IMG/VR virus record: IMGVR_UViG_3300044680_000280
Coordinates: 310,001 to 374,000 of that record
DNA length: 64,000 nucleotides
Direction: 5' to 3' (one strand)
Shown: positions 190 to 64,000 of the stretch, in pieces
Layout: the number at the start of each line of letters is the position of its first letter
How positions within the stretch are numbered: position 1 is the first letter of the stretch
The notes under the pieces: model-generated
What the model was told of the DNA's origin: nothing
What the model saw: only the letters and a program-made list of their open reading frames with translations
Database searches by the model: none
Program-made: the position numbers and the translations under genes

Positions 190-289
190 GTTCCTCTACA
201 TACACCGACGCGGAGCGGGAGCCGAGCCCGAAAGGGGCTGGATAGTTGACCGATTTGCATGGCTTCGAGCCGGTGTACTTATATTCTAC

Positions 290-511
290 ATGAGCACAGA
301 GGACATCGTAAGGCTTACGCTCTGCATCATCCTATTCACGTTAATATGTCTCGCCTTGTCGGGCGTCTTGGACGAAGGGTCCGACAAGTCGAAGTCCGTG
401 GCGGAGAAGGGCGACGCTCTGTTCACTGAAGCCTGCGTTAACCAAGAGAACAGCGGGTCACCCCCTGAAAGCGGTGTATGGATAAAAAAGAACACCCATG
501 CCCACCGTTGA
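290..511 (+). CDS. small membrane protein
   Basis: A-motif at 271; N-terminal hydrophobic helix LTLCIILFTLICLAL. Confidence 0.7.
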   Translation: MSTEDIVRLTLCIILFTLICLALSGVLDEGSDKSKSVAEKGDALFTEACVNQENSGSPPESGVWIKKNTHAHR

Positions 512-1289
512 CGACGCTGCTTCGCCCCGACCTCAATTTGGCGTCATCTTTGACGTTGACGGGGTCCTTCTGGACTCCCTTCCCGCGCACCTGGACGTTT
601 GTCGAAAAAGGGGTCTCGAGTATGGGCTCAACCTCTCGATCCCGGACCCCGCGGCTTTCCGTTCGATGGTCCGTCAGGGCGTGAAGATCAGCCCCATGGT
701 CGACTTCTTCCGAGCGGTCGGCTTTCCGAGTGACCTAGCCGAACGTGCGGATTACGACTACCAACACAACTTCAGCCGTGAGTACACGTCTCCCCTCTTC
801 CCCGGTGTTTCCGAGATGCTGGCACGGTTCAAGACGGCCAACTGGGAGATGGGAATCGTGACGTCGAATACACGGGGAAATATTCGAGAATCTCTTGGAA
901 GTCTCAAGACGTACTTTCGGCACGAAAGCATATTCACCCGAGAGGACGGGATCTCCAAAGCGGTCGCCATCGAGTGCCTTACCGACCTGTTCTATCTCAA
1001 ACCCCACCAGGTCGTCTATATAGGAGACCAACCCGCCGATGCCAAGGCCGCTCTCGACGCGGGCGTCCGTTTCCTGGGCGTCACCTACGGTTGGGGTATC
1101 GAACGGGGAGACAACGGCATGGAGACGGTCGGTCACCCCAAGGAAATAGCCGATTATCTTCTCGCCGGTTTTACGGGCGGTACAACCCCGACGGAATCTT
1201 CGCCTTTGAGCGAGGATGCCCACATTTCATCAACACGTACATCGGCAAAACCTGCTCCTGCGACGACGCGCCAGTCCAGGAGGTCTTGA
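498..1289 (+). CDS. HAD-family hydrolase (phosphoglycolate phosphatase-like)
   Basis: Motif I FDVDGVLLDS, motif II IVTSN, motif IV YIGDQPAD. Confidence 0.9.
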   Translation: MPTVDDAASPRPQFGVIFDVDGVLLDSLPAHLDVCRKRGLEYGLNLSIPDPAAFRSMVRQGVKISPMVDFFRAVGFPSDLAERADYDYQHNFSREYTSPLFPGVSEMLARFKTANWEMGIVTSNTRGNIRESLGSLKTYFRHESIFTREDGISKAVAIECLTDLFYLKPHQVVYIGDQPADAKAALDAGVRFLGVTYGWGIERGDNGMETVGHPKEIADYLLAGFTGGTTPTESSPLSEDAHISSTRTSAKPAPATTRQSRRS

Positions 1290-1386
1290 AGCATGGGGCA
1301 GACAAAGCACGGCTCTCTAGGTTCAGTAAGCAACCTACACCTAACCACTTTCTTTTGTACGGCGTTGGGAAAGTGGCTTGCTCGCT

Positions 1387-1530
1387 GACCGTGCTCGGTT
1401 AGACTCTCCGTTGTCGAGGCGGTGAGTCGGTCCTGAGCACGGGCCGGTCTTTACAGCGTCGCAAGCCGGGCGAAACGACCGGCTAGAGCCCTGATTCGGT
1501 GTTCCACCACCGGGTCGGGGCTCGTGACTT
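1387..1530 (+). ncRNA. candidate structured RNA (three hairpins)
   Basis: Non-coding gap. Stems at 1389-1396/1435-1442, 1464-1469/1479-1484 and a 15-bp stem 1486-1500/1509-1523 with G-U pairs. Confidence 0.4.
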
Positions 1531-1593
1531 TTGTGGGTTTGGATTGCGGCTAGGACTGTGCCTTTCGTCGGACCCGCGGTGTATTAAAAAGGA

Positions 1594-2019
1594 ATGTCAA
1601 CAATTAATCCGGGAGACATCGTGCAACTCAAGTCGGGCGGTCCCAACATGACCGTCTCTCACCTCAACTCGGAGGGTGGGCATAGGGCTCACTGCTTCTG
1701 GTTTGATGGAAATACCCGACGAGATGCGGAATTTAATTCATGCACCTTGAATAAGGTTACGCCTAAGGTTACGCCAAAGAAGGAACCTCTCCCTCATGGT
1801 GGGTATCTCGAGTACAGTGGTGTCATCATTAATGTGACGCCTACACACCGCAACTTTGCTGTTTCAGTGCAGGTCGATGGGTTCGGGGATTTCGTGGCGT
1901 ATACCGCAGTCGGTCAACATGCACCACCAGTAGGTGCCGTGGCTAAGATACGAATTTACGAAAATCCCAGTCTCAATCGCATCCTAGAGTGGTCGACTTG
2001 CCATCACTCATCGGTGTAA
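1594..2019 (+). CDS. DUF2158/YodC-family N-terminus with unrelated C-terminal domain
   Basis: GDIVQLKSGGPNMTV...CFWFDG signature; A-motif at 1577. Confidence 0.8.
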   Translation: MSTINPGDIVQLKSGGPNMTVSHLNSEGGHRAHCFWFDGNTRRDAEFNSCTLNKVTPKVTPKKEPLPHGGYLEYSGVIINVTPTHRNFAVSVQVDGFGDFVAYTAVGQHAPPVGAVAKIRIYENPSLNRILEWSTCHHSSV

Positions 2020-2028
2020 TGGGACGGC

Positions 2029-2340
2029 ATGAGCACCGATAGGCAAACCCTCATCGAGGACATTCCCTACGGCGCCATTGTTACGGTTCACGGAAATGAG
2101 GGCTCCGTCGTGTCCTACATCGAACGCGACCTCAGTATACGGTCATTCACGATGTCCAGGCGACCCTACCACTGGCACCCTTTCTTCATGGTGCCTCACG
2201 TGTCCTTGGAGATGGAACGCTTCTTGATCGACTCCCTCTGGAGGGAGTCGCCACATGCGGACGAGGTAGTGGTCGCTCGAAGCCTCAACTCGGACGGTAG
2301 TGTTGACCGCTTCCTCTGGTCAATCAAACACGTGCTTTGA
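2029..2340 (+). CDS. hypothetical protein
   Basis: A-motif at 2012, 10 nt upstream. Confidence 0.7.
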   Translation: MSTDRQTLIEDIPYGAIVTVHGNEGSVVSYIERDLSIRSFTMSRRPYHWHPFFMVPHVSLEMERFLIDSLWRESPHADEVVVARSLNSDGSVDRFLWSIKHVL

Positions 2341-3210: not shown

Positions 3211-3254
3211 GACTCTCTATTACACCGGCGGTGCCCCCCTTTTGGTGTAAAGGT

Positions 3255-3493: not shown

Positions 3494-3736
3494 ATGGCAA
3501 AGACTGCTAAGCAGAAGGAATGGACGCCGAAGCGGCTGCGTAAGGCGGTCACGGCGGGATCGAATGCCGAAAAGGTCGAGCTACTTCAGGAGATCGGGGT
3601 TTTGAAGAGTGACGGCACGCTGACCGAACGCACCGAGGACTGGGGCAATAAGCCAACGCGGACCCCGGAGATTGCGCTGGAGAATAAGAGGGACCCGATG
3701 GTTGAAAGGCCGGCACGACGGAGATCGTGTCGTTGA
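3494..3736 (+). CDS. hypothetical basic protein
   Basis: ORF with upstream GGAGG. Confidence 0.6.
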   Translation: MAKTAKQKEWTPKRLRKAVTAGSNAEKVELLQEIGVLKSDGTLTERTEDWGNKPTRTPEIALENKRDPMVERPARRRSCR

Positions 3737-5245: not shown

Positions 5246-5518
5246 ATGAACAACTCCACGTTTGAGGTCGGATCGACGGTTTATCTGAAGTCGGGCGGAC
5301 CCCGCATGACGGTCATCGATGTGAAAGATGGGCCTCTCTACCGAGAGGTCCACTTGGCGTGGTTTTCGAATGGGGACCTAAAAACGGCCCAGATGGTATC
5401 CGATGCTCTGACGGATGTGAATCCCGCGGTTCCGCCGAAGCCCGCCCGTCCACCGGCCATTCCACCGGCTCCCACGAAGGAGTCCCTCTTTGGGCTCCTT
5501 CGTGGGAACTTAGGGTAG
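5246..5518 (+). CDS. DUF2158/YodC-family protein with Pro-rich tail
   Basis: GSTVYLKSGGPRMTV...LAWF; A-motif at 5228. Confidence 0.8.
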   Translation: MNNSTFEVGSTVYLKSGGPRMTVIDVKDGPLYREVHLAWFSNGDLKTAQMVSDALTDVNPAVPPKPARPPAIPPAPTKESLFGLLRGNLG

Positions 5519-8042: not shown

Positions 8043-8079
8043 GGTTGAACGTGGTTTCGATCTACGCTGTACTTCCGCC

Positions 8080-8283
8080 ATGGAAACCGTCGAACGTCTG
8101 ATGAAGGAGAACGAAGAGCTTCGGGCTCAGGTCAAAAAGCAACTCGTTTTGCTGAGGTCGGCAGAGTACGAGCTTTACAATGTGCGAGTACGGATGATAG
8201 CCGAAGACAAATACAAAGGCGACGCGTGGACCAGGCTCAACGCGCTACTTCATCTCATTCATGTGGCTACGGTCTCGACATGA
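8080..8283 (+). CDS. hypothetical coiled-coil protein
   Basis: B-promoter at 8045; ATG 8 nt after the TA of the -10 element. Confidence 0.7.
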   Translation: METVERLMKENEELRAQVKKQLVLLRSAEYELYNVRVRMIAEDKYKGDAWTRLNALLHLIHVATVST

Positions 8284-8528
8284 ACGGCAAGGCCCGACTC
8301 ATCGTTCACGGTGTGACAGTAGAGACTTGGACGAAGCGGTACGGCGTTTTACCGTTCAGTCATCCGTGCTCCGAGTGCGGCCGTATGTTGACGACCACGA
8401 TTCCGTTTGCTCAGGGCACGCTTCGCGGCCTGGCGGCTCCTCGCTGCGTTTGCGGAAATGAGGCAACCCCTTACGGTCTCGTTCGAGACTCGGCCTATGG
8501 AGACCTGTTTACGGGTCGGGAACGTTGA
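8280..8528 (+). CDS. small Zn-finger-like protein
   Basis: CSEC...CVCG; ATGA overlap. Confidence 0.6.
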   Translation: MNGKARLIVHGVTVETWTKRYGVLPFSHPCSECGRMLTTTIPFAQGTLRGLAAPRCVCGNEATPYGLVRDSAYGDLFTGRER

Positions 8529-9124
8529 TCGAAGTCGTACACGTCGAAACCGCCGAAGGTTGGGTACAAGGCGACGATCCGGATCTATCGGTCGGGCGGC
8601 GGGTGGTACCCCGGAGCGAGGAGAAGGAGAGGGTCGAAATTCGATCCTCTCTGGTCGGGCGTCGGTGTACCCTGATCGACATGAGCACACTTCTCGAGGA
8701 GCTGAGAAACGCCGGGTTTCAATACCACTCGAATCCGTTATTGGACCGAGCCGCGGATGAGATTGAACGGCTCACGAATGAGCTGGATGTGCTGATCGAT
8801 AACATTTGGCACGCGGGTAAGAACGAGTCAGACATCGTTGCCATCTCGAAGATCGTGGGGTACGAAGGGATCGGTAACCTCATTAGGATGGTCGAGGACC
8901 TCAAGAAGCGTGCCGACGAGGCCGAGAGTTACAAGGCGCAGGTCGAGGAACTTACGCAGAGGCTCGAAAGGGGGCGCATCCTCGAAGCTGCGGAGTCCGC
9001 GGTGACGTGCTTGTCGCACCGTACAGAGTGTCATGCAACGGGTTGCCTTTGCCATGACTGCCGGTCCTTCCGTTTTGCCACCCAGTTACTCGAATCCGTT
9101 AGAAGGGTTGACTCTAAAGATTGA
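8525..9124 (+). CDS. hypothetical coiled-coil protein (possible start 8681)
   Basis: LLDRAADEIERL phage-type motif, C-terminal Cys cluster. Confidence 0.6.
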   Translation: MIEVVHVETAEGWVQGDDPDLSVGRRVVPRSEEKERVEIRSSLVGRRCTLIDMSTLLEELRNAGFQYHSNPLLDRAADEIERLTNELDVLIDNIWHAGKNESDIVAISKIVGYEGIGNLIRMVEDLKKRADEAESYKAQVEELTQRLERGRILEAAESAVTCLSHRTECHATGCLCHDCRSFRFATQLLESVRRVDSKD

Positions 9125-9185
9125 TCCGTGAGCGGGTTGAACTCCGGCGAATCCCCGCTGTACTAGGAGGGAAGGAGTTACGACG

Positions 9186-9395
9186 ATGAAAGCCTACGGA
9201 CTCAATCGAATCGAAGATGGGGATGATGACGCGGTTGGCTGCGCCAGCAACGGGCGTGCCACCCACATTTACAGCGTCACTGGACGTTCGTACCGAAGCC
9301 TTCGAGGCGGCCGTAAGGATGCAGCTCGCCGTACCCACAAGCGCCGCGCCCGTGCCGAGGGCAAAAACATTACCCGCAACTGCGGCGAGGAATGA
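9186..9395 (+). CDS. small basic protein
   Basis: B-promoter at 9137 and SD. Confidence 0.65.
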   Translation: MKAYGLNRIEDGDDDAVGCASNGRATHIYSVTGRSYRSLRGGRKDAARRTHKRRARAEGKNITRNCGEE

Positions 9396-9408
9396 AAGGG
9401 AAACGACA

Positions 9409-9657: not shown

Positions 9658-9660
9658 CCG

Positions 9661-13597: not shown

Positions 13598-13645
13598 GTC
13601 CTATATACTACACCGGGTCCCCGCCCTCGGTGTAAAGATAGTCTC

Positions 13646-17028: not shown

Positions 17029-17269
17029 TGTCTTGCCCTTCCTCTTCCAGCATGTGTTCAAAGACTGTTTTGGAATTAACCGGTTTTACGGGAATTTCTT
17101 GTGGTTGAGGAACGACTACGGGCTGCTCTGGCACCACCGCTCGTCGGGCTCTCCATCGGTTCCAAAGGGAACCAAAGAGGTTGTTGCGCACCGCGGTGGA
17201 TAGAGCGGCAAAGAACATGCTCACCGCGGTGTATGCCCCAACCTCCATAATGGTGTCGCGCGGTGTCAT
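17021..17269 (-). CDS. small membrane protein with W-tag variant
   Basis: Hydrophobic N-terminus; KTVFEHMLEEEG near the C-terminus. Confidence 0.7.
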   Translation of the reverse strand: MTPRDTIMEVGAYTAVSMFFAALSTAVRNNLFGSLWNRWRARRAVVPEQPVVVPQPQEIPVKPVNSKTVFEHMLEEEGQDNG

Positions 17270-20781: not shown

Positions 20782-20838
20782 GACTCTTTTCTACACCGAC
20801 GCCCTCTCCCGGTGTAATGCCTTTTCGCGAGGCGAACG

Positions 20839-21379: not shown

Positions 21380-21430
21380 GCGGGTTCTTTACACCGTAAC
21401 TTTACGGTGTACCGGTGTAGAGAAGTAATC

Positions 21431-23298: not shown

Positions 23299-23367
23299 GT
23301 GGGATGAATACACCGGCCCTGCTTCTCGGGCTTGAACTTTGTACGACCTTGCGGTGTAATCTGAGCC

Positions 23368-24941: not shown

Positions 24942-24985
24942 GAAATATCTTACACCGATCGCCCGGGCGGTGTAAGAAAGATGGC

Positions 24986-25988: not shown

Positions 25989-26190
25989 GGAAACCCTTAG
26001 GGTTTCAAAGACCACATACACCGACGCCAAAGGGGAACGACAATGAGAAAGGCTTGACACCGCCCGGGGACTCGTTAAACTCCGCTCGAAAGACGAGGCC
26101 CCATGAAGTTCGTTTTTGCCGCCGTGTTTTGCGCCATTTCCGTCACCGGGATTGCCGCCGTTTGCGGTTTCTTCTCTCCCTGAACTTCCC

Positions 26191-26394: not shown

Positions 26395-26651
26395 CCTACC
26401 GGCTCCGGAATGGTATACTGGTCCGTGACCAGGTCTCGCGAGGAAACCTACAGGCTTGCTCTGACCGTGCTCGAGGTAGCCCGTAAGAACGGGGACATCG
26501 TGAGTGCGGCTATCGCCTCCGCGGTCATCGCTGCCATTCACCGGTGCGAAAGGAACTGACCATGCCTGATTTCATCGTCGAAATGAGAATTCTCTGTGAG
26601 ACCCTCAAGCGAATCGAACGGCTGTCAACTCGTCGGTGTAATGGGGCTCTC

Positions 26652-27179
26652 ATGGAAGATGAAGTCACCAAATTGCGCCAGCAGGTCGAACAACTGCTAG
26701 GGGACATCCACGCGGTTTCCGAGGACTATGCGGACGCCAAGAAGCGTGCCGAAGAGGCAGAGGGTAAGCTCGACCGTATCCTCAAGCTGCCCCGGAAGTC
26801 CTACGGAGGTGATGTCAATGCTGACGGTTGGAACAACGCCCTCGATGAGATTCAGATCATCGTCGGGGCTCGGCGGGCCGTTTCACCAGAGGAGCGCGTC
26901 GAGACCGCTCCGTATCATTACACGTTCTACGTGCGTCCCCACAGAAACAGCAAACAAGAACCGTGCCCTATCAACAAACTTCACGTGGCGGTTGAAGCGG
27001 ACGGGACGGCCTGTCCGCCTCCGACGGCCTGTCCGGACTGTAAAACGGACCTGCTTTTTCGCCTCGCCACTAGGGGCCCAGCCAACGTGTTCGAGATCCT
27101 CGACAGAGACGAAGGTGTCGTATACGATGAGGACATCAAGAATCTGTGGGGCTCTCTCCTGGAGTCGGAAACGGTGTAA
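26652..27179 (+). CDS. coiled-coil protein with W-tag variant
   Basis: A-motif at 26634; KNLWGSLLESETV*. Confidence 0.7.
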   Translation: MEDEVTKLRQQVEQLLGDIHAVSEDYADAKKRAEEAEGKLDRILKLPRKSYGGDVNADGWNNALDEIQIIVGARRAVSPEERVETAPYHYTFYVRPHRNSKQEPCPINKLHVAVEADGTACPPPTACPDCKTDLLFRLATRGPANVFEILDRDEGVVYDEDIKNLWGSLLESETV

Positions 27180-27188
27180 GGTAGTAGT

Positions 27189-27539
27189 ATGGCATACAAA
27201 CTGACTGTCTACGATTACACCCCCAACGAGGCGGAGCTTCTCGCGATGTCGGAGGCCACGCGAAAGCACGCCGCCCGCACGGCTAAAATCGATAGTGAGC
27301 GCCTCAGCGTACGGGTCGTGAGCACACAAACTGCTCAGATCAACGACAACCCACTCTATTGTTGCCAAACGGCGACCGAGGTCAAACTCGATGGCCGGGA
27401 CTTGAATACCCGCGTCCCCGAGGAGCGACAAATCTATTTTTCGGTTCGAAATGGAATGTGCCACCAAGAGGCACAAATCATACCGGACCCGAGCCGCCTC
27501 CGTTTGGTGCAAATCATCGAAGGACCGTTGGTTCCCTGA
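27189..27539 (+). CDS. hypothetical protein
   Basis: A-motif at 27172. Confidence 0.75.
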   Translation: MAYKLTVYDYTPNEAELLAMSEATRKHAARTAKIDSERLSVRVVSTQTAQINDNPLYCCQTATEVKLDGRDLNTRVPEERQIYFSVRNGMCHQEAQIIPDPSRLRLVQIIEGPLVP

Positions 27540-27573
27540 CGAAACGAACACCGATCCGGTGTATAACTAGGGC

Positions 27574-27954
27574 ATGAATCGTCGAAGCTTTCTCACGTCC
27601 GCCTTTACGGGCGCTCTCGTGTTTATCGCCAGCAAATTACCGTGGAACAACTACGGCGCCGTGTTCGAGGTCGTCTACGAGGACCCCGATGGGAGCGGGA
27701 TGGACTATAGAGGTCACCTTGGCTCACACGTGTTCAATGCCAAACGATGCTGCAACAACTGCACCATCATCTTTGCTGCATTTGCGCCGGGCTCGGACGT
27801 CGACAACGGACCTTGCTTCGTTCCAGGGGAGCTGAAACCAATCAACGGGGCGGCAAAGAGACTCCAGGCTGAGATCGATGTCTCAAGGTTGGATTGTCTC
27901 GTTCCCCTACAAGAGCAGACTCAACGCACGTGGTACGCCGCGCCGCGAGTCTAG
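27574..27954 (+). CDS. putative Tat-exported protein
   Basis: MNRRSFLTSAF twin-arginine signal; A-motif at 27557. Confidence 0.7.
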   Translation: MNRRSFLTSAFTGALVFIASKLPWNNYGAVFEVVYEDPDGSGMDYRGHLGSHVFNAKRCCNNCTIIFAAFAPGSDVDNGPCFVPGELKPINGAAKRLQAEIDVSRLDCLVPLQEQTQRTWYAAPRV

Positions 27955-27966
27955 CCTAAGGGAATC

Positions 27967-28317
27967 GTGACACCCCTCGCTGAAGTCGCTCGGTCCCTTC
28001 TCTGCGAGGGCGGTCTCGTTGCCCGCCAGTGGGCTCAAGACACGTCGAGGGAAGGTGTACGGTGGATTTTCATGGAGAAGCCAGAAGGACTCTCTGAAGA
28101 CGAACTGGCACTCGCCGCGGGACTCGTGGAGATGATGGCCGAGAGGGCCGGGCAACTTCCCCCCGACTGGACCGCCTCGGTTACCCGTCAGGGGGAACCG
28201 ATCTACCTCTTTGACCCCTCGCTGTTCCGATCCCGTAGGATGGCAGAGGAAGGTGGTCCGGAGCCCCTTCGGCGACGGGGTATCTACGCCATGCCCAATT
28301 TTCTGACGTGGGCGTAG
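27967..28317 (+). CDS. hypothetical protein resembling the partner protein of DUF6036-type nucleotidyltransferase pairs
   Basis: LAAGLVEMMAERAGQLPPDW...PEPLRRRGIYAMPNFLTWA pattern recalled from memory. Confidence 0.5.
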   Translation: MTPLAEVARSLLCEGGLVARQWAQDTSREGVRWIFMEKPEGLSEDELALAAGLVEMMAERAGQLPPDWTASVTRQGEPIYLFDPSLFRSRRMAEEGGPEPLRRRGIYAMPNFLTWA

Positions 28318-28340
28318 CTGAGCGGTGTAACAGCCTTGTT

Positions 28341-28730
28341 ATGAGCGATCACGCCAAGGTTGTAGAGGACGCCAAGTCGCTCGTAGCAGCGATTAACACC
28401 CTGAGGGGGTTCGGCATCGGGATCCCCCAGGAGTTCGCTCGACTCGGTCAGTTTGCCGAGAGCCTCCTTGAAGCCGTCGAACACTTCGATCGGTGGAACA
28501 CGGAGAACTGCTCCGATGAGCAATCCGTCAAAAACGCCCAGGAGGATCGCGATAAGGTCGAGGCCAAACTAGAAGAGGAGCAGGAGCTACGCAGGATCTA
28601 CCAGGAGAAGCTGTACAAGGCGAAAGACTGGCTTCGAAAGCTGTGTGACGTAGAGTACATCTACAGAGAATCGACCCTTCTCCTAGCGCTCGAGGACCTT
28701 AGGGTGCCTGACCCATATGGTAAGTTGTAG
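28341..28730 (+). CDS. coiled-coil protein
   Basis: A-motif at 28323. Confidence 0.7.
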   Translation: MSDHAKVVEDAKSLVAAINTLRGFGIGIPQEFARLGQFAESLLEAVEHFDRWNTENCSDEQSVKNAQEDRDKVEAKLEEEQELRRIYQEKLYKAKDWLRKLCDVEYIYRESTLLLALEDLRVPDPYGKL

Positions 28731-28797
28731 ACGGTGAACCCAAAGGCCTCAAAAAGAGTGAGACCAACGTCAATTTCGTCGGTGTAGACTTTACCCA

Positions 28798-31059: not shown

Positions 31060-31101
31060 TTCCGTCTCTTGGATGGAGTACAGCGCGCACGATGGTGGAG
31101 T

Positions 31102-31425
31102 TCAAGCCGATTTTTTCTTGACCGCCTGGTTGATGTCCAGCAGGGCCCGACAGATCTGACAGACATCGCAGGTGCATGGGGACTCTGTCTTGTTCGCGTT
31201 AAGGCGTTCTCCTGCCAATCGGGCGCCTTTTCGCAGGATTCCCCGGATCTGTTTGAGCACCTTCTTCTTCTCGTTCAACTCGGCATGGATGACGTCCGTC
31301 TGCTCGTTGGTCGTCGTGAGCATCATGTCGAGCTCTTCAATACGGGTTTTCAGCCCGTCGTTTTCGGTGGTGAGTTTTTTGATCACCATCTTGTAGCCTC
31401 TCGAAATCAGATCTAGAGTGCTCAT
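31102..31425 (-). CDS. coiled-coil protein with CxCxxC
   Basis: A-motif at 31436. Confidence 0.7.
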   Translation of the reverse strand: MSTLDLISRGYKMVIKKLTTENDGLKTRIEELDMMLTTTNEQTDVIHAELNEKKKVLKQIRGILRKGARLAGERLNANKTESPCTCDVCQICRALLDINQAVKKKSA

Positions 31426-36130: not shown

Positions 36131-36168
36131 AGGTTGAACTTCCCTCACTCCAGCGCTGTACTACTCCC

Positions 36169-37794: not shown

Positions 37795-37878
37795 CGTTGT
37801 CTCCTTGGGAATGAGTACAACGCGACAAGTGGGAAGGTTCAAACCCCAAATGGAGTGAATCGGTGTATACGCCTATTC

Positions 37879-40346: not shown

Positions 40347-40520
40347 CGTCAGATTTACCTACACCGGATCTGGACTTACGGCCCGACGGGGGTTTCATCT
40401 TCCACTTGTCGATCGCGTTAGGGTATGATCCCCCTCGTGGCTCGCGTTGTGAGACGTGGTCGGAACTTTTAGGAACTGTTTTAAGTTGAACCCTAGGGGA
40501 GACCGCGCTGTACTCCCCCC

Positions 40521-46559: not shown

Positions 46560-47090
46560 ATGCCCTCAGAGATCAGCAAGAAGTACACGCCCAAAACCAC
46601 TCCGGAGAAACTGGGCTACCTCGTAGAGGAGTGTGGAGAAACCCTCGCGGCAGTGGGCAAAACTCTTCGGTGGGGGTTGGAGAGCTACAATCCCGAGCTC
46701 CCCGTCGCTGAGCGGGAAACAAACCGTGATTGGATCCTGCGGGAGATTCACGACCTCGAGCGGGCGATCACCCTCGTCCGAGAGGCCCTTACAAAAGTCC
46801 GGGTCACCTACGACCACAAGAGTGACGTCCTCTACGTGAAGAATACGGAGACGGACATCTACAGCAGTCAGGAGCTCCCGGACGACACCTTCGTCATTGT
46901 GAACCGAGACTACCACGGGAATCCCGTTGGTCTCCAAGTCCTCGAAGCGAGCAAGACGACCACGGCTTGGCACCTCTACGAGAAGGCTATTCCCAAATAC
47001 TTGTTTGTCGCGGTCTCCGATTGGATCAGTCGGCTCGGTACTCGAGCCGAACTCATCGGTCATTTAGTACAAGGAGAGGAAAAGTCATGA
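46560..47090 (+). CDS. MazG-like domain fused to DUF2283 domain
   Basis: LVEECGE...REIHDL (MazG-like) and VTYDHKSDVLYV...GNPVGLQVLEAS (DUF2283); A-motif at 46543. Confidence 0.65.
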   Translation: MPSEISKKYTPKTTPEKLGYLVEECGETLAAVGKTLRWGLESYNPELPVAERETNRDWILREIHDLERAITLVREALTKVRVTYDHKSDVLYVKNTETDIYSSQELPDDTFVIVNRDYHGNPVGLQVLEASKTTTAWHLYEKAIPKYLFVAVSDWISRLGTRAELIGHLVQGEEKS

Positions 47091-48043
47091 ACATGGCCGA
47101 ACTAGAGTTACGGTTGCGCCGCCAATTTTCCATCGACGCTGGGGAAGCCCTTGTCGACTACATGAACGCCACCGTGGTGAGTAAACTTCAAGCGCTCAAT
47201 GTCATCTGTCGGCACAGCATCTGTCCGCCCGGGGCTTGCGGCCCCTGTTACGACGATAGAGAGTGGCAGGATGAAGTCGCACGAGCCTCTTACGGTAACT
47301 TCTGTCCCCAATGTGGGGCAAAAATGCCCGGTCAGCACGAACTGTCCTGCATGTATGTGTTACCGGCCGATGAGTGTGTTGACGCACTGGTCGATGAGGG
47401 CGTTAACGTGCCCACGCCACCTTCTTCCGAGTCTGAAGATTCGCGCGACCACCTCATCGACGATCTCAGTCGCCAACTCACCGAAATGACCGAACGTTAC
47501 TCGATGGCAATGGGGCCCGGTTCATCGTTTGCCGTCGTCAACCACTTTGAGCGGGCTAAAGAGCTCCTCGGCGCCGGTCAGGAATTCATCGACGAAGCCG
47601 TCGAACGGGTTCTCAAGGCTCGACAAGAACGGGAAGCTGCCCTCGAAGCCGAACTCGCTGAGGCAAAGAAGGACCGCGACACCCTACGAGACCGTGCGGT
47701 CGAAGCTCTACAGCAAAGGGATCGAGCCCGGGATGAAACGGACGCTATTCGAAAGGAGCTGAACGCCCTTAAAGACCAGGGACCATTTGTGCGTTCCGTC
47801 AAAAAATCGCCCAAATCTGACACGTACCGCGTCCCCCGAGCAAAGTGCATCACGTGTGATACGGAATTGAGTTTCCGCCAACACCTTCCCGCCGTACCCG
47901 AGTCTCCTGAAGACCCACCCGGGCCGGCTTTCAATGTTTTCGTTCACACCGACCCCTGTTCGCAAGGATGGGTGTGTCCAGCCGGGGGAAAGATCATCGG
48001 GGCGAATGGATTGGTGCGTTTAAACGAAGCGCCGATGCCCTAG
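47087..48043 (+). CDS. coiled-coil protein with Zn-finger motifs
   Basis: ATGA overlap; CPQCG, CITC. Confidence 0.7.
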   Translation: MNMAELELRLRRQFSIDAGEALVDYMNATVVSKLQALNVICRHSICPPGACGPCYDDREWQDEVARASYGNFCPQCGAKMPGQHELSCMYVLPADECVDALVDEGVNVPTPPSSESEDSRDHLIDDLSRQLTEMTERYSMAMGPGSSFAVVNHFERAKELLGAGQEFIDEAVERVLKARQEREAALEAELAEAKKDRDTLRDRAVEALQQRDRARDETDAIRKELNALKDQGPFVRSVKKSPKSDTYRVPRAKCITCDTELSFRQHLPAVPESPEDPPGPAFNVFVHTDPCSQGWVCPAGGKIIGANGLVRLNEAPMP

Positions 48044-50094: not shown

Positions 50095-50151
50095 TCTACT
50101 ACACCAAGATTCTCGATGAGTCAAGACCTCAGCCGGTGTAACCTGGGAACT

Positions 50152-54603: not shown

Positions 54604-54663
54604 GCTCCTTCTATTACACCGTTTGAACTTCGGGCAACCCCGGGTCGTACTGGAGAGGAACAC

Positions 54664-55925: not shown

Positions 55926-55947
55926 CATTCTGGTGTACGGATAAAAC

Positions 55948-57309
55948 ATGCGAACCTCCTTCTGTGGGCGACTTCGAGACCGTGCTGAGGCCTTTTGGCA
56001 AAAGCACAAGAACTGGGAAGCCCCGCCGATCCCGAAGAACGTTCGACGAGTCGTGGGTGCGGTTCAAACTTTGCTCCCATTCCTGGCGGACAGGGAGGAC
56101 ACCCTTATCCAAAAGACGCTGAAGGGCATCTCTCTCGCTGAAGCCGTATACCGCATAGTGGAGGGGAACCGCCTGATTTCCGAGTATTCGGCGTACCTAG
56201 AACAGTGGGATTTGGTCCAGTCGTCAAACCGTAACCTTGCCCAACTGCTCTCTCAGTCGAAGATCTTGGAGATGCTTCCCTGCAATGAGATCCCGCTTTC
56301 CCACGGTGAGGCCAAATTCTGGGAGATTAATTCCGAGCAGGGGAAGTTTCTACTTGGAATTGGCGAGTACAACTCCAGCCTCGCTTATCCGGAGAATTTC
56401 GACGTACCAGGACTCCTGAACAGCCTCTGGAGCTGGTACGGGAACTGTATAACGATAAGTGTCCCTAAAAGGGGACACGGTAATCTGAGTTTGGAGTCCT
56501 TCCAAGAGCACCACGGGGAAATCCTCGGGAGCGCAAAGGCCACGTACGAACACTTCCTCTCGCAGCATCGCCGCTTTAAGGCGAATGGTAAGTCACGAAC
56601 TTACCTCTTCTACGGACCCCCCGGCACCGGAAAGAGCACCTTTTCTCGTAGACTGGCCTTGGAAACGAGCTCCCGCGTGCTCATCATCGACGCAACCTCC
56701 ATCTCTTTTTGGGGGTGCGACGAACTTCTCTACCTGCTATCAGCTCTTCAACCGGAGTTTGTTCTGCTGGACGACATTGATCGTGCTTCGAGTTCCATGT
56801 TTCTGCCGCTCCTCGAAAGGGTCAAACAAGAGGTGCCGGAAACGTCGTTCGTAATCACGGTCAACGATGTCTCGAAGCTCGACAAGGCACTGTTTCGACC
56901 CGGTCGGATCGATACCGTGCATGAATTTCTTTCTCCGGTGGAGGACGACCGCCGTGAAGTCATCTTGGGTTATCTCAAGCAGAGTCTTCAAATCGTGGAC
57001 AAGGAGACCCTGGAATTCCTAGTCAAAAGTACGGAAGGAATGTCTCAAGACTACCTCAGAGAGCTCGTTCTACGCCTCGACTACGAGGATGTGCCGAGCG
57101 CCCTCCTTTCTGTCATGAATCTGTGGAATCTTTCAGGCGGGAAATCTTCGAACAGCGCACCGGTTCCGGTCGGGTCTTCGTCAGAGCCAGAAGAGTCAGA
57201 GTCGGAGCCAAAGTCGGATAGACAACCACCGGTAAATATGACCAAAAGCACCGTTTCCTGGCGGTCTGTAAAAGATGGCTCAGTTTCGTCATACCCGATT
57301 GCCCGTTGA
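55948..57309 (+). CDS. AAA+ ATPase
   Basis: Walker A YGPPGTGKST, Walker B LLDDID, SRH ITVND...ALFRPGRID. Confidence 0.92.
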   Translation: MRTSFCGRLRDRAEAFWQKHKNWEAPPIPKNVRRVVGAVQTLLPFLADREDTLIQKTLKGISLAEAVYRIVEGNRLISEYSAYLEQWDLVQSSNRNLAQLLSQSKILEMLPCNEIPLSHGEAKFWEINSEQGKFLLGIGEYNSSLAYPENFDVPGLLNSLWSWYGNCITISVPKRGHGNLSLESFQEHHGEILGSAKATYEHFLSQHRRFKANGKSRTYLFYGPPGTGKSTFSRRLALETSSRVLIIDATSISFWGCDELLYLLSALQPEFVLLDDIDRASSSMFLPLLERVKQEVPETSFVITVNDVSKLDKALFRPGRIDTVHEFLSPVEDDRREVILGYLKQSLQIVDKETLEFLVKSTEGMSQDYLRELVLRLDYEDVPSALLSVMNLWNLSGGKSSNSAPVPVGSSSEPEESESEPKSDRQPPVNMTKSTVSWRSVKDGSVSSYPIAR

Positions 57310-57790: not shown

Positions 57791-58255
57791 ATGGTGTATC
57801 AGCCTAGGTCGGGAGATATTGTTCGGAGTGTCATACCCGATTGCCCGTTGAGCGCTCGAATTGGTGTGGTGCGGTCGCTGACTCCGGGTGGGTCGTACAA
57901 CGTTGCCTTTTCGAATACCTCCGTGGCCGTGTATACAGCCGATGAGATCGTCCCGCTCGTGGAAGGGGTAAATCGAGTCGAGCTGATCGGCGGTGTAAGC
58001 GCCATGGGTACTTATGCTGGGAAGTACCTACATAGTCCGGTGCACGGAATCTCCATCGACTGGGACCAGCACGGACGTGGAACTTTTCTGTTCGTCAACT
58101 CCGTACAAGCGTGTGATTGGGATCGTCTCAGACTCGTTGACAAAGTTGGTATGTCGATGACAGCCCCGAGGGAGATCCCGTGCCCAAACAAGAGCTGCCA
58201 ACGGAAGAACGATATCGGACGAAACTGCTACTGGTGCGGAACCCTCGTAGTATAA
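57791..58255 (+). CDS. SH3-like protein with conserved C-terminal Zn-ribbon tail
   Basis: A-motif at 57774; CPNKSCQRKNDIGRNCYWCG. Confidence 0.8.
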   Translation: MVYQPRSGDIVRSVIPDCPLSARIGVVRSLTPGGSYNVAFSNTSVAVYTADEIVPLVEGVNRVELIGGVSAMGTYAGKYLHSPVHGISIDWDQHGRGTFLFVNSVQACDWDRLRLVDKVGMSMTAPREIPCPNKSCQRKNDIGRNCYWCGTLVV

Positions 58256-58264
58256 TCAAGGCTC

Positions 58265-58651
58265 ATGCCGTATAGCGAAAAAGTCATCAATCACTTCGAG
58301 AATCCTCGCAACGTTGGCTCCCTCGATAAGAACGATCCGAACGTCGGAACGGGCGTCGTCGGCGCCCCGGCCTGTGGAGACGTGATGAAGCTCCAGATCC
58401 TCGTCAACGACGACGGGGTCATCGAGGATGCTAAATTCAAAACCTTTGGGTGTGGAAGCGCGATTGCCAGTTCGTCCCTCGCGACCGAGTGGATCAAAGG
58501 CAAAACGCTCGACGAGGCGCAAGCCCTCAAGAACACGTCCATCGTCGAGGAACTCTGTTTGCCTCCCGTCAAAATTCACTGCTCTGTCCTGGCCGAGGAT
58601 GCCATCAAGAGCGCCATCGCTGATTACAGGAAAAAGAAGGGTTTGACTTGA
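58265..58651 (+). CDS. iscU: Fe-S cluster scaffold protein
   Basis: YSEKVINHFENPRNVG, GAPACGDVMKLQI, FGCGSAIASS, LPPVKIHCSVLAEDAI. Confidence 0.97.
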   Translation: MPYSEKVINHFENPRNVGSLDKNDPNVGTGVVGAPACGDVMKLQILVNDDGVIEDAKFKTFGCGSAIASSSLATEWIKGKTLDEAQALKNTSIVEELCLPPVKIHCSVLAEDAIKSAIADYRKKKGLT

Positions 58652-61633: not shown

Positions 61634-61701
61634 GGGTGATTCTTACACCAGGTTCCGCGAAGGATGGTTGAACTTTCGGGCGGGTGTGTTGTATCTATTC
61701 C

Positions 61702-61896
61702 ATGTCTAAGCGCGGGTTTCGATTCTTCGATGATAGGGAATACATGCTCGTTCAGAAGCACACGGGAGAACTCTCTAAGGAAGCGGCCGATGAGCAGGCC
61801 GATCGTCTCCGTAAGGAGGGCTTCTTGGTGCGGGTCGTCAAGAGTGGCCGCTTTTCACACTCTGTCTACTCGCACCTACCGGACGACTCCCCGTAA
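61702..61896 (+). CDS. small hypothetical protein
   Basis: B-promoter at 61668. Confidence 0.7.
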   Translation: MSKRGFRFFDDREYMLVQKHTGELSKEAADEQADRLRKEGFLVRVVKSGRFSHSVYSHLPDDSP

Positions 61897-62269: not shown

Positions 62270-62479
62270 GTGCGGCGCCGTCGACATCCACTTCGTCTCG
62301 TGTGGTTGTTGATTGTGCTTTGGTTTCGGAGCTGGCGGCTTCTCTGGAGGTGCCCCATCTGCTCGAAGGTCAGGCGCTGGGGAACCGAACACCCGCTCGA
62401 CACGTATCCGATGTTATGCGACATGTGGAACCAGCCGGAGTGCTGTCGTCGAGAGTTTCCTAAATGGGCGTACGCTTGA
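62270..62479 (+). CDS. small Trp/Arg-rich protein
   Basis: A-motif at 62207; RLVWLLIVLWFRSWRLLWRC. Confidence 0.5.
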   Translation: MRRRRHPLRLVWLLIVLWFRSWRLLWRCPICSKVRRWGTEHPLDTYPMLCDMWNQPECCRREFPKWAYA

Positions 62480-62510
62480 ACTTTCCGATGCTCCGCGCCG
62501 TACTCCCGCC

Positions 62511-62933
62511 ATGGGTCTCATCGAACGTTTAATGCGGGAATTCCAGGATCGAAAAGCTCGTTGGCAACCAATTCGAGCAGCCATCCTCGCCCTTTCTGCC
62601 GAAGAACGCCTACAGTTCCTCGCGGAAATGATCACTGAAATCGAGGACAAAACCCCTAAAGGCAGACAGCTTAACAGCCACGATCACCTGTTAGCCGGGC
62701 CCGGTGAGTACACGTTTGGAGCGTCCAGGTTCCGCCTCAGTCGCAAAGTTGCAAAGAGGGTGGATCGCATCGCCAATGCGCACGGCTTTTGTCTGATTGA
62801 GGTCTCGAACTTTCCTGGTGGCGTGGAGTACCAGCGGTGGTTTTCTGGTCCGAGTCGTGGCAGCCCCATCGATGAAGAGACTGAGGTTGCCATTCTATCC
62901 GACATCGAGAAGGATGGGATCCCCTTGTGGTGA
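62511..62933 (+). CDS. hypothetical protein
   Basis: ORF. Confidence 0.65.
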   Translation: MGLIERLMREFQDRKARWQPIRAAILALSAEERLQFLAEMITEIEDKTPKGRQLNSHDHLLAGPGEYTFGASRFRLSRKVAKRVDRIANAHGFCLIEVSNFPGGVEYQRWFSGPSRGSPIDEETEVAILSDIEKDGIPLW

Positions 62934-62992
62934 CACTCGACGTTTGAACTTTCGGCTACACCACGCCGTACTTTCATGAGACAGGAACTTCA

Positions 62993-63175
62993 ATGTCACG
63001 CCCTACCAAAGCATCGCAATTCGTAGAAAGCCTTACAACGACTCAACGTCTCGCACTGATCGAGCTCATTGCTGGTACTGACGAGCTTGTCGGGCAGAAG
63101 AAGGCGACGTGCATACGTGACGCCCGGGCGCTCCTAGTGGGTGCCCTCGATCGCCTCTGCAAAGAATCTTGGTAA
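62993..63175 (+). CDS. hypothetical protein
   Basis: B-promoter at 62944, CAGGA SD. Confidence 0.65.
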   Translation: MSRPTKASQFVESLTTTQRLALIELIAGTDELVGQKKATCIRDARALLVGALDRLCKESW

Positions 63176-63177
63176 CC

Positions 63178-63471
63178 TCAGTCGTCTCCCATCATCTGCT
63201 CAAAAATACTCTTCCGGGGCGGCGGTTCAGGAGGCGCGGGCGGGGGAGACGACGGTGTTCTCGGACGGTTCCCATGCCACGCCTCGATGTTCTCCAGGCT
63301 CCGCCTAGTCGTCGACGGACACGGTAGCTTCTCAGGATCGGTCTCGCCCGTAAAGTTGATTCCCCACGCCTCCCGCAACTCCTGCCATTCTGGGTGGCTA
63401 TCACAGTACTCACATTTTGCGGGGGCATGAAGTACGGATGAGTCGCAGTGGGGGAATTGCTCGATGGGCAT
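63178..63471 (-). CDS. conserved phage-type Cys/His protein with W-tag variant
   Basis: FPHCD..LHAP..CEYCD..W..LREAWGINFTG; RKSIFEQMMGDD*. Confidence 0.75.
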   Translation of the reverse strand: MPIEQFPHCDSSVLHAPAKCEYCDSHPEWQELREAWGINFTGETDPEKLPCPSTTRRSLENIEAWHGNRPRTPSSPPPAPPEPPPRKSIFEQMMGDD

Positions 63472-63521
63472 TCCCTTCCATACACCACGCACCGTGCCGA
63501 CGGGCGGTGAGTCCGATGTTC

Positions 63522-63872
63522 CTACCCCAGGTCCCCGTCCCGATAGGGCCCGTGATCGTCGCCCAGGCTCGGGCGCGCAAGCACGGACATCGCTCCATGC
63601 TTGGGACCCAAGCATCGGCAGGAATGGCCTTCCTTAGATGGCGCCTTCTCCAGCTCGGGAAGGAGCTTCTCAATGGCGGCCTGGACCTTCTTGAAGTCGC
63701 CTACATAGAGCACGTTCGCGCGCCCTCCCGAGTAGTGCCAGTCCACGGCCTGACCGCTCTCCTTGGCGACGGCCTTGACCCACTTCTCGACCCGGTGCGA
63801 ACAGCCGTCGAGAATGATGGCCGAGTGGCCTTTCTTGAACACCTTGTCGTTGCAGGGCGGCGGCGAGGGCAT
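63522..63872 (-). CDS. conserved phage-type hypothetical protein
   Basis: A-motif at 63883; VDWHYSGGRA. Confidence 0.75.
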   Translation of the reverse strand: MPSPPPCNDKVFKKGHSAIILDGCSHRVEKWVKAVAKESGQAVDWHYSGGRANVLYVGDFKKVQAAIEKLLPELEKAPSKEGHSCRCLGPKHGAMSVLARPSLGDDHGPYRDGDLG

Positions 63873-64000
63873 ACCATATCTATACACCGGCGACGCGTCT
63901 GCCGAGCTTCTTGTTCGCCATGAACGGAACGACACCCACAGGACTCGGGAACTTCACGGGTTTCCCGGTTCACTTTCGTCGATGTCTGGCATCGATGACC

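What the first reader, a model, noticed from the sequence alone, without database searches (positions are those of the whole stretch)
201..63889. CGGTGTA heptamer 10-11 nt before most start codons: a phage-specific leaderless-promoter code
By manual count there are about 60 exact CGGTGTA copies on the two strands, versus roughly 8 expected at about 58% GC (my estimate), plus about 13 TGGTGTA variants. Most sit 9-13 nt (mode 10-11) upstream of ATG/GTG, and these genes usually lack a Shine-Dalgarno. The motif is not complementary to the 16S anti-SD. The spacing fits a -10-type element with transcription starting at or near the start codon (leaderless mRNA; inference). No consistent -35 is visible, which recalls single-element phage sigma promoters such as the T4 gp55 late promoter. 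Almost every gene is therefore its own transcription unit.
Basis: partly seen in the sequence, partly recalled or inferred. Interest (0 to 1): 0.8.

Follow-up and report, generated by a model that had tools for sequence, protein, structure and literature searches.

The report
Leaderless-gene promoter motif of huge phages
A seven-base word, CGGTGTA, sits 10-11 bases before the start codon of about 40% of the genes in this 463-kb phage and in related ~400-kb phages, and it most likely acts as a minimal promoter that makes messenger RNAs with almost no leader.

Summary
CGGTGTA occurs 64 times against 5.6 expected, and TGGTGTA 18 times against 3.4. Of these 82 copies, 57 lie 9-13 nt (mode 10, then 11) before an ATG that opens an ORF of at least 40 aa; random positions do so 2.8% of the time. 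No other single-base variant behaves this way.

The promoter/leaderless reading is well supported indirectly:
- Motif genes lack a Shine-Dalgarno (SD), while other genes carry GGAG-type SDs.
- The motif marks the first gene of same-strand runs.
- Divergent pairs sit back to back, as little as 8 nt apart.
- Nothing upstream of the motif is conserved.
- A few copies lie 22-245 nt upstream of genes that have an SD.

Only 28-41% of genes carry the motif, not most, and there is no sign that every gene is its own transcription unit; terminators are at chance level.

I found a second, bipartite promoter class: TTGAAC, 17 nt, TGTAYT, 6 nt, then A at +1. It is often leaderless too. The two classes together cover 41 of 48 run-leading genes.

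The motif and its spacing recur in several other 370-450-kb viral contigs with 47-66% GC. A stringent probe of 185,579 cellular genomes found nothing above chance, which favours a phage-encoded reader.

This is a new variant of a known kind. The closest known cases are the Deinococcota ORF-adjacent −10 motif and Thermus phages φYS40 and P23-45.

The parts
201..63889 (.). Span holding all 82 YGGTGTA copies (64 CGG, 18 TGG), of which 57 are linked to an ATG start
13609..13634 (.). Back-to-back divergent class I pair, 12 nt between the motifs. It drives 13349-13597 (-) and 13646-14569 (+), both at d=11
20792..20816 (.). Divergent pair, 11 nt apart. The + copy is 22 nt from the ATG of 20839-21078
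21390..21419 (.). Divergent pair with a tandem doublet CGGTGTACCGGTGTA on the + strand. Genes 21062-21379 (-) and 21431-21715 (+)
24951..24974 (.). Divergent pair, 10 nt apart. The + copy heads 24986-25399
26634..28786 (+). Five motif copies (26634, 27172, 27557, 28323, 28780) heading five of the six same-strand genes in this stretch (28072-28317 has none), with no SD
55931..55937 (+). TGGTGTA 10 nt before the AAA ATPase gene 55948-57309. The ortholog in the 435-kb relative L002 keeps CGGTGTA-N10-ATG with an unrelated spacer
50134..50140 (+). CGGTGTA 11 nt before pyrF (OMP decarboxylase) 50152-50886
26017..26023 (-). Distal copy about 125 nt upstream of the run-leading gene 25601-25891 (-), which has its own GGGAGAGG SD. 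This is a leadered transcript
3243..3249 (+). TGGTGTA about 245 nt upstream of the SD-bearing run-leading gene 3494-3736
8045..8073 (+). Class II promoter TTGAAC-N15-GCTGTACT, then 6 nt and the ATG of 8080-8283 (leaderless)
36134..36162 (+). Class II promoter, leaderless, gene 36169-36528
40486..40514 (+). Class II promoter, leaderless, gene 40521-40880
62476..62504 (+). Class II promoter (GCCGTACT variant), leaderless, gene 62511-62933
9137..9164 (+). Class II promoter with a 21-nt leader that contains an SD
37814..37842 (-). Class II promoter with a 19-nt SD-bearing leader, gene 37312-37794 (-)
31077..31105 (-). Class II promoter with a 17-nt leader, gene 30718-31059 (-)
23332..23358 (+). 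Hybrid: TTGAAC lies 17 nt upstream of the TGTA of a CGGTGTA copy (d=9), gene 23368-23673
47087..48043 (+). Example of a motif-less internal gene with a canonical SD (AAGGAGAGG) that overlaps the stop of the upstream gene
17227..17233 (+). Orphan copy inside a gene and antisense to it; 12284-12290 (-) and 10237-10243 (-) are similar. These may be antisense starts or chance copies

Best explanation
YGGTGTA (class I) is the core, -35-independent recognition element of a promoter. Its TA lies at about -12/-11 relative to the A of the ATG when the gap is 10 nt. RNA polymerase carrying a factor conserved in this clade of ~400-kb phages, probably phage-encoded, binds it, melts DNA just downstream and starts at the A of the ATG or 1-2 nt before it. 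The first gene of each unit is therefore translated from a leaderless or near-leaderless mRNA. Downstream genes of the same unit use ordinary GGAG Shine-Dalgarno sites or translational coupling. A second class (TTGAAC-N17-TGTAYT-N6-A+1) supplies most of the remaining unit starts. Shown directly by the sequence: enrichment, spacing, exclusivity with SD, position at run heads, back-to-back pairs, and conservation across relatives.
For: (1) Enrichment and sharp specificity: 64 copies against 5.6 expected. 73% of CGGTGTA and 56% of TGGTGTA copies are linked to an ATG-ORF at 9-13 nt, against 2.8% at random, and other one-base variants are at background. (2) The motif and SD exclude each other: 4/60 against 22/56, p = 3e-5. 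(3) ATG is the start codon in 56/60 motif genes, and the base at -1 is a pyrimidine in 46/60 (41% for all ATGs in the window). The pyrimidine tracks the ATG in both the d=10 and d=11 groups. (4) Run-leading genes carry the motif proximally in 30/48 cases against 27/92 for internal genes (p = 2.5e-4). Counting distal copies and class II, 41/48 heads are covered against 34/92 internal genes. (5) There are 17 divergent motif pairs with only 8-100 nt between them, which leaves no room for separate upstream promoters. No position upstream of the motif is conserved, and sigma70-consensus promoters are at chance level. (6) A few copies lie 22-245 nt upstream of genes that then have an SD. This fits a promoter but not a ribosome-binding element. 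(7) Class II gives an internal calibration. It has canonical geometry, and the 7th base after TGTAYT is A in 20/27 sites whether or not it is the ATG, so leaderless starts are a built-in habit of this genome. (8) Motif and spacing are kept in relatives with different GC content and unrelated spacers. These include the orthologous AAA ATPase gene in L002 and contigs of 372, 398, 435 and 448 kb. (9) Precedent: in Deinococcus radiodurans an ORF-adjacent -10 motif without a -35 was shown experimentally to be a promoter for leaderless mRNAs, used by about 30% of ORFs alongside a GGAG class (PMC12340547). Thermus phage phiYS40 makes most of its middle and late mRNAs leaderless (PMC3594737).
Against: There is no transcript 5'-end data, so everything is inferred from DNA. 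The hexamer does not fit TANNNT: T at the sixth position occurs in only 16/60 sites. The register is ambiguous. If class I is read like class II (hexamer TGTAnn), the canonical start would be the conserved G at -2, giving a 2-3 nt leader rather than none. The pyrimidine at -1 is only weakly different from other genes (59%; p = 0.048). About 12 CGGTGTA copies are not start-linked, roughly twice the 5.6 copies expected by chance, so spurious sites are not avoided. No sigma or RNA polymerase gene could be tied to the motif. The only candidate seen, P0015, lies outside the window, shows only a sigma region 4, and could not be modelled. The host is unknown, so a host-encoded reader is not excluded.
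Confidence: 0.75

Rival explanations
1. It is the same kind of promoter, but it is read by a host sigma factor (housekeeping or alternative) with no phage-encoded specificity factor. The motif would then simply mirror the host's promoter code.
For: Deinococcota and Actinobacteria hosts use -10-only, ORF-adjacent promoters with leaderless mRNAs read by their own RpoD (PMC12340547). Class II looks like an ordinary bacterial bipartite (ECF-like) promoter. No phage sigma with a region 2 was found in about 125 kb examined.
Against: A 21-base divergent-pair probe found about the chance number of hits (20, against about 17 by my estimate) in one genome each of 185,579 species, and none showed extra motif density. 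The same probe and its variant hit almost only 370-460-kb viral contigs. The motif is kept in phages of 47-66% GC, which is unexpected if it merely copied one host's promoters. The probe is stringent and the host may be unsampled, so this is not decisive.
Confidence: 0.2
2. The motif acts in the RNA as a non-Shine-Dalgarno translation-initiation signal, bound by a phage or host protein or by an unusual rRNA segment. Transcription would start further upstream.
For: Fixed distance to the start codon and mutual exclusion with SD are also what an alternative ribosome-binding signal would show.
Against: Only GGUG could pair with the canonical 16S 3' tail, and it would sit 12-13 nt from the AUG, too far for that part of the anti-SD (established knowledge). 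The rest of the genome uses GGAG at normal spacing. The motif is enriched at run heads. Divergent pairs are 8-17 nt apart with no conserved promoter upstream. Copies 22-245 nt upstream of SD-bearing genes cannot act as ribosome sites.
Confidence: 0.07
3. The motif is the binding site of a DNA-binding regulator or an RNA-processing signal next to an unrecognised promoter, not the polymerase recognition element itself.
For: A 7-bp invariant word is also typical of a regulator half-site. Divergent pairs form inverted repeats.
Against: The spacing between the two arms of the pairs varies from 8 to 100 nt, so there is no dimer geometry. Roughly one copy per 800 bp across the ~125 kb examined is far more than a specific regulator would need. 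No other conserved element that could be the real promoter lies within 45 nt.
Confidence: 0.05

Closest known systems
ORF-adjacent '-10-motif' promoters of Deinococcota (TANNNT; D. radiodurans, D. deserti, Thermus), PMC12340547 and PMC4007540
   Same: A short -10-region element a few bases before the ORF, with no -35 needed. It gives leaderless mRNAs, is used by roughly a third of the genes, and the rest carry a GGAG ribosome site. The two signals exclude each other.
   Different: The sequence is YGGTGTA, with five invariant bases upstream of TA and no conserved T at the sixth hexamer position. It occurs in a huge phage clade rather than a cellular genome.
Thermus phages phiYS40 and P23-45: -35-less (extended -10) middle/late promoters; leaderless middle/late mRNAs in phiYS40; P23-45 gp39 blocks -35 recognition (PMC3594737, PMC7403470)
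   Same: A phage with one promoter class that has a -35 and one that does not, the latter giving leaderless messages. This suggests a switch away from -35-dependent initiation.
   Different: Those phages use the host sigma A and a TATAAT-like hexamer. Here the hexamer is non-canonical, the temporal classes are unknown and no gp39-like gene was sought. The promoter details of phiYS40 come from my memory; the original paper was not held.
T4 late promoters (TATAAATA at -10, read by gp55 with gp33 and the gp45 clamp)
   Same: A single short element at -10 without a -35, repeated many times in a large phage genome.
   Different: The sequence is different. T4 late mRNAs have leaders with an SD. No gp55, gp33 or gp45 homolog was seen in the parts examined.
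ECF (group 4) sigma promoters such as B. subtilis SigW (TGAAAC-N16-CGTA; from my own knowledge)
   Same: Class II (TTGAAC-N17-YGTAYT) has the GAAC...N16-17...CGTA/TGTA shape. The GTA core is shared with class I.
   Different: Class I has no -35 at all, which ECF sigmas normally require.

Membership tests
Deinococcota-type ORF-adjacent -10 promoter (leaderless) | Short motif at a fixed, small distance upstream of the start codon | tested here: met
   57/82 copies lie at 9-13 nt, mode 10
Deinococcota-type ORF-adjacent -10 promoter (leaderless) | Motif sequence TANNNT (A at position 2, T at position 6) | tested here: not met
   TA is invariant, but the sixth position is T in only 16/60 sites (A 28). 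Five invariant bases lie upstream instead
Deinococcota-type ORF-adjacent -10 promoter (leaderless) | No -35 element, and a separate GGAG class for the other genes | tested here: met
   Below 0.2 bit upstream. SD words in 4/60 against 22/56 genes
Deinococcota-type ORF-adjacent -10 promoter (leaderless) | Transcription starts at or next to the start codon | not testable with these tools
   No RNA data. Only the geometry and the pyrimidine at -1
Extended -10 (TGn) promoters | TG at -15/-14, one base upstream of the hexamer | tested here: inconclusive
   With TA at -12/-11 the TG falls at -14/-13, one base off. With hexamer TGTAnn the G at -14 is invariant, but -15 is C in 50/60 and T in 10/60
T4-type late promoter (gp55) | TATAAATA at -10 | tested here: not met
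   The consensus is YGGTGTA followed by a weak A
T4-type late promoter (gp55) | gp55/gp33/clamp genes in the genome | not tested
   Only about 125 of 463 kb could be read, and none was flagged there
ECF sigma promoter | A -35 GAAC word 16-17 nt upstream of a CGT/GTA -10 word | tested here: not met
   Met by class II (27 sites) but absent from class I
Shine-Dalgarno ribosome-binding site | Complementarity to the 16S 3' tail at 5-10 nt from the start codon | tested here: not met
   Only GGUG matches the canonical tail, and it lies 12-13 nt from the AUG. The flanking invariant C, U and A are unexplained. The host 16S itself is unknown (anti-SD sequence from established knowledge)
Sigma-70 consensus promoter (TTGACA-17-TATAAT) | Enrichment of consensus-like sites | tested here: not met
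   6, 6 and 3 sites against 7.4, 6.7 and 7.0 expected in three 20-kb scans

The most novel reading that the evidence does not exclude
This clade of ~400-kb phages encodes its own initiation factor (a sigma-2-only, gp55-like protein or a non-canonical polymerase subunit) with a previously undescribed specificity, YGGTGTA. It uses that factor to launch hundreds of leaderless transcription units. A second, ECF-like class (TTGAAC-N17-TGTAYT) is read by another factor, possibly the region-4 protein P0015. Together they would form a phage-borne two-tier transcription programme coupled to leaderless translation.
Probability: 0.3. Interest if true: 0.75.

Novelty: new variant of a known kind. Interest (0 to 1): 0.58.

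Why it matters
If the reading holds, three things follow:
- **Better gene starts.** At least 14 of 135 pipeline-called gene starts in this window would be corrected. The same rule would improve gene calling in a whole clade of ~400-kb phages whose genes are almost all unknown.
- **A ready promoter map.** It gives transcription units, divergent pairs and two promoter classes for an uncultured huge phage.
- **An undescribed polymerase specificity.** The seven bases are invariant, there is no -35 and no T at -7. This specificity could be tested in vitro and might be useful as an orthogonal minimal promoter.

It would also extend large-scale leaderless expression, so far known from Deinococcota, Actinobacteria and two Thermus phages, to huge phages.

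Tried and rejected
- **Close relatives in GenBank phages.** None were found. The two Al-Shayeb-type genomes that share the AAA ATPase (LR756500, LR745208) do not use the motif. Neither do the more distant AAA homolog contigs L124 and L125.
- **First divergent-pair probe (14 specified bases).** It was swamped by chance hits in viral contigs. Longer probes were designed instead.
- **Host phylum from pyrF.** The ESM Atlas gave mixed phyla. The host remains unknown.
- **Literature search for the word.** It returned primers only.
- **Walking along the 463-kb assembly to find sigma or polymerase genes.** About 125 kb was read, almost all ORFans. I saw one integrase, one methyltransferase, a few metabolic genes and one protein with a sigma region 4.
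- **The region-4 protein P0015.** No region 2 was detectable by Pfam, NCBIfam or a full HMMER search. The AlphaFold2 single-sequence model had pLDDT 43.7 and the Atlas model 0.45, so I ran no fold search.
- **Paralog family A1 as a handle to fetch more of the genome.** It is present only inside the window.
- **PHROGs on the ten largest ORFs.** No hits.
- **Hybrid promoters as proof that one sigma reads both classes.** A -35 word at the right spacer is not enriched among class I sites, so I dropped this argument.
- **Original papers on phiYS40 and P23-45.** Not held in the library.


Full report
**What the window is.**
The window matches IMG/VR contig IMGVR_UViG_3300044680_000280 (406,734 bp; roughly positions 310,001-374,000) exactly. 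The same sequence sits in a longer JGI assembly, 3300044797 Ga0480565_0000004 (463,523 bp). GC content is 54-58%. There are no tRNAs and no Rfam hits.

Genes are small, switch strand often, and are almost all ORFans. Recognisable ones are:
- pyrF (50152-50886), a HAD hydrolase (498-1289), and an AAA ATPase (55948-57309);
- DUF2158 and DUF2283 proteins, an acetyltransferase, a NifU-like protein, a phosphoribosyltransferase and a weak PRAI-like hit.

None of the ten largest ORFs hits a PHROG family. I saw no capsid, terminase or tail gene in the roughly 125 kb I could read. The label 'phage' therefore rests on the IMG/VR listing and on phage-like relatives of the AAA ATPase.

**The observation.**
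CGGTGTA occurs 64 times on the two strands, against 5.64 +/- 2.12 in shuffles. TGGTGTA occurs 18 times against 3.43 +/- 1.83. CGGTGTA is the most over-represented 7-mer in the window by a wide margin.

Of the 64 CGGTGTA copies, 47 have an ATG that opens an ORF of at least 40 aa 9-13 nt downstream. So do 10 of the 18 TGGTGTA copies. Random positions do so 2.8% of the time. The ATG-only distance histogram is 9:5, 10:30, 11:17, 12:3, 13:2. Fourteen other single-base variants, including AGGTGTA, CGGTGTC, CGCTGTA and CGTTGTA, are at background in both number and linkage. All seven positions therefore matter, and only C/T at the first is tolerated.

The logo is sharply bounded. Nothing is conserved from -44 to -1 of the motif. 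Downstream there is a weak A at +1 (32/60), a weak a-T-a around +4 to +6, and G at +8/+9.

Start-linked copies, given by the + strand coordinate of the first motif base:
- On +: 271, 1577, 2012, 5228, 6684, 8663, 11422, 11763, 13628, 14903, 18970, 21413, 23352, 24968, 26634, 27172, 27557, 28323, 28780, 29909, 31490, 34191, 36742, 37861, 41616, 43397, 45626, 46543, 48317, 49056, 50134, 52610, 53436, 54854, 55449, 55931, 57774.
- On -: 201, 3221, 13192, 13609, 18863, 19902, 21390, 23309, 24597, 29886, 31436, 34167, 39251, 39668, 40360, 41569, 43345, 49041, 52573, 54615, 60102, 61644, 63481, 63883.

**How many genes carry the motif.**
I used gene calls made independently of me, in the JGI assembly. 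Of 135 called genes in the window, 38 have the motif 9-13 nt before the called start, and 52 have a motif-linked in-frame start in the same ORF. Adding six uncalled motif ORFs gives 58 of 141 genes, or 41%. 'Most start codons' is therefore an overstatement. In 14 genes the pipeline start differs from the motif-linked start, for example 29968 against 29926, 31669 against 31507, and 38469-39206 against 38469-39239.

**Evidence that it is a promoter for leaderless messages.**
1. Motif genes almost never have an SD word at -18..-5 (4/60). Other genes often do (22/56; p = 3e-5; random windows 13%). The phage's translation signals are otherwise canonical (GGAG, GAGG, AAGGAG at normal spacing). This implies a canonical anti-SD in the host. 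The motif shares only GGUG with the extended SD consensus and lies 12-13 nt from the AUG, so it is not an SD.
2. ATG is the start codon in 56/60 motif genes, as expected if the 5'-terminal AUG is what the ribosome recognises.
3. The base before the ATG is C or T in 46/60, against 41% for all ATGs in the window. It follows the ATG in both spacing groups (23/31 at d=10, 16/17 at d=11). This is the usual pyrimidine(-1)/purine(+1) start-site preference, but other genes also show 59%, so this point is weak.
4. The first gene of a same-strand run has the motif proximally in 30/48 cases, against 27/92 for internal genes (p = 2.5e-4).
5. There are 17 divergent motif pairs with 8-100 nt between them, and nine have 17 nt or less (for example 13609/13628, 20792/20810, 21390/21405, 24951/24968, 49041/49056). 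A transcript that contained the motif would have to start inside the neighbour's motif or gene, yet nothing upstream is conserved. Sigma-70-consensus promoters are at chance level: 6, 6 and 3 found against about 7 expected.
6. Some copies are far from the gene they face, and those genes then carry an SD. Examples are 26017 (-), 125 nt before 25601-25891; 3243 (+), 245 nt before 3494-3736; and 20810 (+), 22 nt before 20839-21078. A ribosome-binding element could not work at such distances. A promoter can.

Motif-less run heads often show TTGAAC, 14-15 nt, G-Y-Y-G-T-A-Y-T. There are 18 such sites in the window and 27 in about 105 kb of this genome. Read as -35 TTGAAC, a 16-17 nt spacer and a hexamer TGTAYT (CGTACT in some), the geometry is canonical.

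The six bases after the hexamer are C-rich. The seventh is A in 20/27 sites, whether it is the A of an ATG (14 sites, leaderless) or the first base of a 12-22-nt leader that usually holds an SD. This works as an internal calibration: polymerase in this system starts seven bases after the hexamer, and the genome often places an ATG exactly there.

Class I and class II together, counting distal class I copies, cover 41 of 48 run heads, against 34 of 92 internal genes. Several of the seven uncovered heads are doubtful 25-50-aa calls. The shape GAAC...17...YGTA recalls ECF-type sigma promoters (my own knowledge, not tested).

**Register and start site.**
If the TA of class I is -12/-11, as in sigma-70-type hexamers, the A of the ATG is +1 at d=10. 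If class I is read in the same register as class II (hexamer TGTAnn), the canonical start is motif+9. That base is G in 22/31 of the d=10 sites, which would give a 2-nt leader. Either way the leader is 0-3 nt. The sequence alone cannot decide between the two.

The sixth base of a TANNNT hexamer is not conserved (T in 16/60), so class I is not an ordinary housekeeping -10.

**Transcription units.**
Intrinsic-terminator-like hairpins are at chance level: 20, 21 and 21 found against 17-20 expected. Of the 65 motif-less internal genes, 37 have an SD or overlap or abut the upstream gene. The picture is short operons headed by a leaderless gene, not one unit per gene.

**Relatives.**
- The AAA ATPase has a 33%-identical ortholog on a 435-kb viral contig (L002, 66% GC). 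That gene is preceded by CGGTGTA-N10-ATG with an unrelated spacer, and six of the eight YGGTGTA copies in that 21-kb locus are start-linked.
- Other parts of the same genome show the same density (L058, L128, L130, L131, L153).
- Two 21-base probes for divergent leaderless pairs hit, besides this contig, contigs of 371.7 kb (two independent places), 398 kb, 447.8 kb (15 copies in 11.5 kb) and 23 kb. A 156-kb contig from the sister sample also uses the motif. GC content in these loci ranges from 47% to 66%.
- The first of these probes, run against one genome for each of 185,579 bacterial and archaeal species, gave 20 hits. That is about what I estimate from chance (about 17). None shows extra motif copies, and two are perfect palindromes.
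- More distant phages that share only the AAA ATPase do not use the motif.
- Class II was seen only in this phage and in the 156-kb contig.

Taken together, this favours a recognition factor carried by the phage clade. The host is unknown and may be unsampled, so it is not proof.

**Candidate reader.**
About 22 kb beyond the right end of the window, the genome encodes a 366-aa protein (L130:71-1171, minus strand; P0015). JGI names it a sigma-70 family factor. Only its C-terminal region 4 is detectable (Sigma70_r4_2, 7.8e-10). The ECF superfamily model scores 38.8 bits, below its 42.9 cut-off, and no region 2 was found. A full HMMER search found mostly HTH-only matches. Structure models are too poor to use, with pLDDT 43.7 and 0.45.

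A region 4 would suit the -35-bearing class II better than class I. Its role is speculation.

**Comparison with what is known.**
The architecture is essentially the one shown experimentally in Deinococcus radiodurans: an ORF-adjacent -10 element without a -35, leaderless mRNAs, use by about a third of the genes, and GGAG for the rest (PMC12340547). It was also seen in D. deserti (PMC4007540).

Among phages, Thermus phage phiYS40 makes most middle and late mRNAs leaderless (PMC3594737). P23-45 uses -35-less extended -10 promoters after its gp39 protein blocks -35 recognition (PMC7403470).

What is new here:
- the word itself (YGGTGTA, with no T at -7);
- its scale, extrapolating to several hundred sites in a 463-kb genome;
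- its conservation across a clade of ~400-kb phages;
- its coexistence with an ECF-like second class.

I therefore rate it a new variant of a known kind.

**Verdict.**
- The promoter/leaderless interpretation is likely (about 0.75).
- 'One unit per gene' is rejected.
- 'Phage-specific' is favoured but open.

Noticed in passing
window 8045-8073, 9137-9164, 32243-32271, 34331-34359, 35572-35599, 36134-36162, 40486-40514, 42131-42159, 51034-51062, 54623-54651, 61668-61695, 62476-62504, 62944-62972 (+); 49614-49642, 41961-41989, 40005-40033, 37814-37842, 31077-31105 (-): A second promoter class: TTGAAC-N14/15-GYYGTAYT, then a C-rich 6-mer and an A. About half the sites are leaderless and the rest have SD-bearing leaders. 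The shape is ECF-sigma-like.
   Followed up: yes
L130:71-1171 (-), same as L058:48-1187 (-), about 22 kb right of the window end: A 366-aa protein with a clear sigma-70 region 4 (ECF type) and no detectable region 2; JGI calls it a sigma factor. Its own upstream reads TTGACC-N16-TACGAA-N7-ATG, closer to a housekeeping promoter than to either class.
   Followed up: partly
window 57791-58255 (+), 51779-52312 (-), 33236-33565 (-): A three-member paralog family with a nearly invariant C-terminal cysteine motif (CPNSSCQRKNDIGRNCYWCG), probably a zinc ribbon. It was found only in this genome.
   Followed up: partly
window 1594-2019 (+), 5246-5518 (+), 18547-18852 (-): Three DUF2158 paralogs, each headed by a class I motif.
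   Followed up: no
window 29926, 31507, 39239, 31425, 1594, 5246, 8681, 11441, 26652, 52628 and others: In 14 genes the pipeline start codon differs from the motif-linked in-frame start. Class II also suggests earlier starts for 34452-34736 (34368) and 61744-61896 (61702).
   Followed up: partly
window 1486-1523 (+) and 32762-32789 (+): Two unusually strong GC-rich hairpins followed by T runs (16 and 12 pairs). They are the only convincing terminator candidates in the window.
   Followed up: no
window 17021-17269 (-) and 17271-17711 (-): Adjacent genes with the identical upstream string CTGCGAGAGAAGTGAC before the ATG, which looks like a local duplication.
   Followed up: no
window 58244-58264 (+): A lone TAGTATAAT, a near-perfect housekeeping -10, 8 nt before the ATG of 58265-58651.
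   Followed up: no
L128:2418-3251 (-), L128:8580-9395 (+), L130:2421-3365 (+), L130:10321-11022 (+): The flanks encode a tyrosine integrase, an N6/N4 DNA methyltransferase, NadA (quinolinate synthase) and a GmrSD_N protein. No phage structural gene appeared in about 125 kb.
   Followed up: no
L131 about 8200-10000 (left of the window): Five class II promoters within 2 kb and few class I copies, so the two classes are unevenly spread along the genome. This may reflect different expression modules.
   Followed up: no
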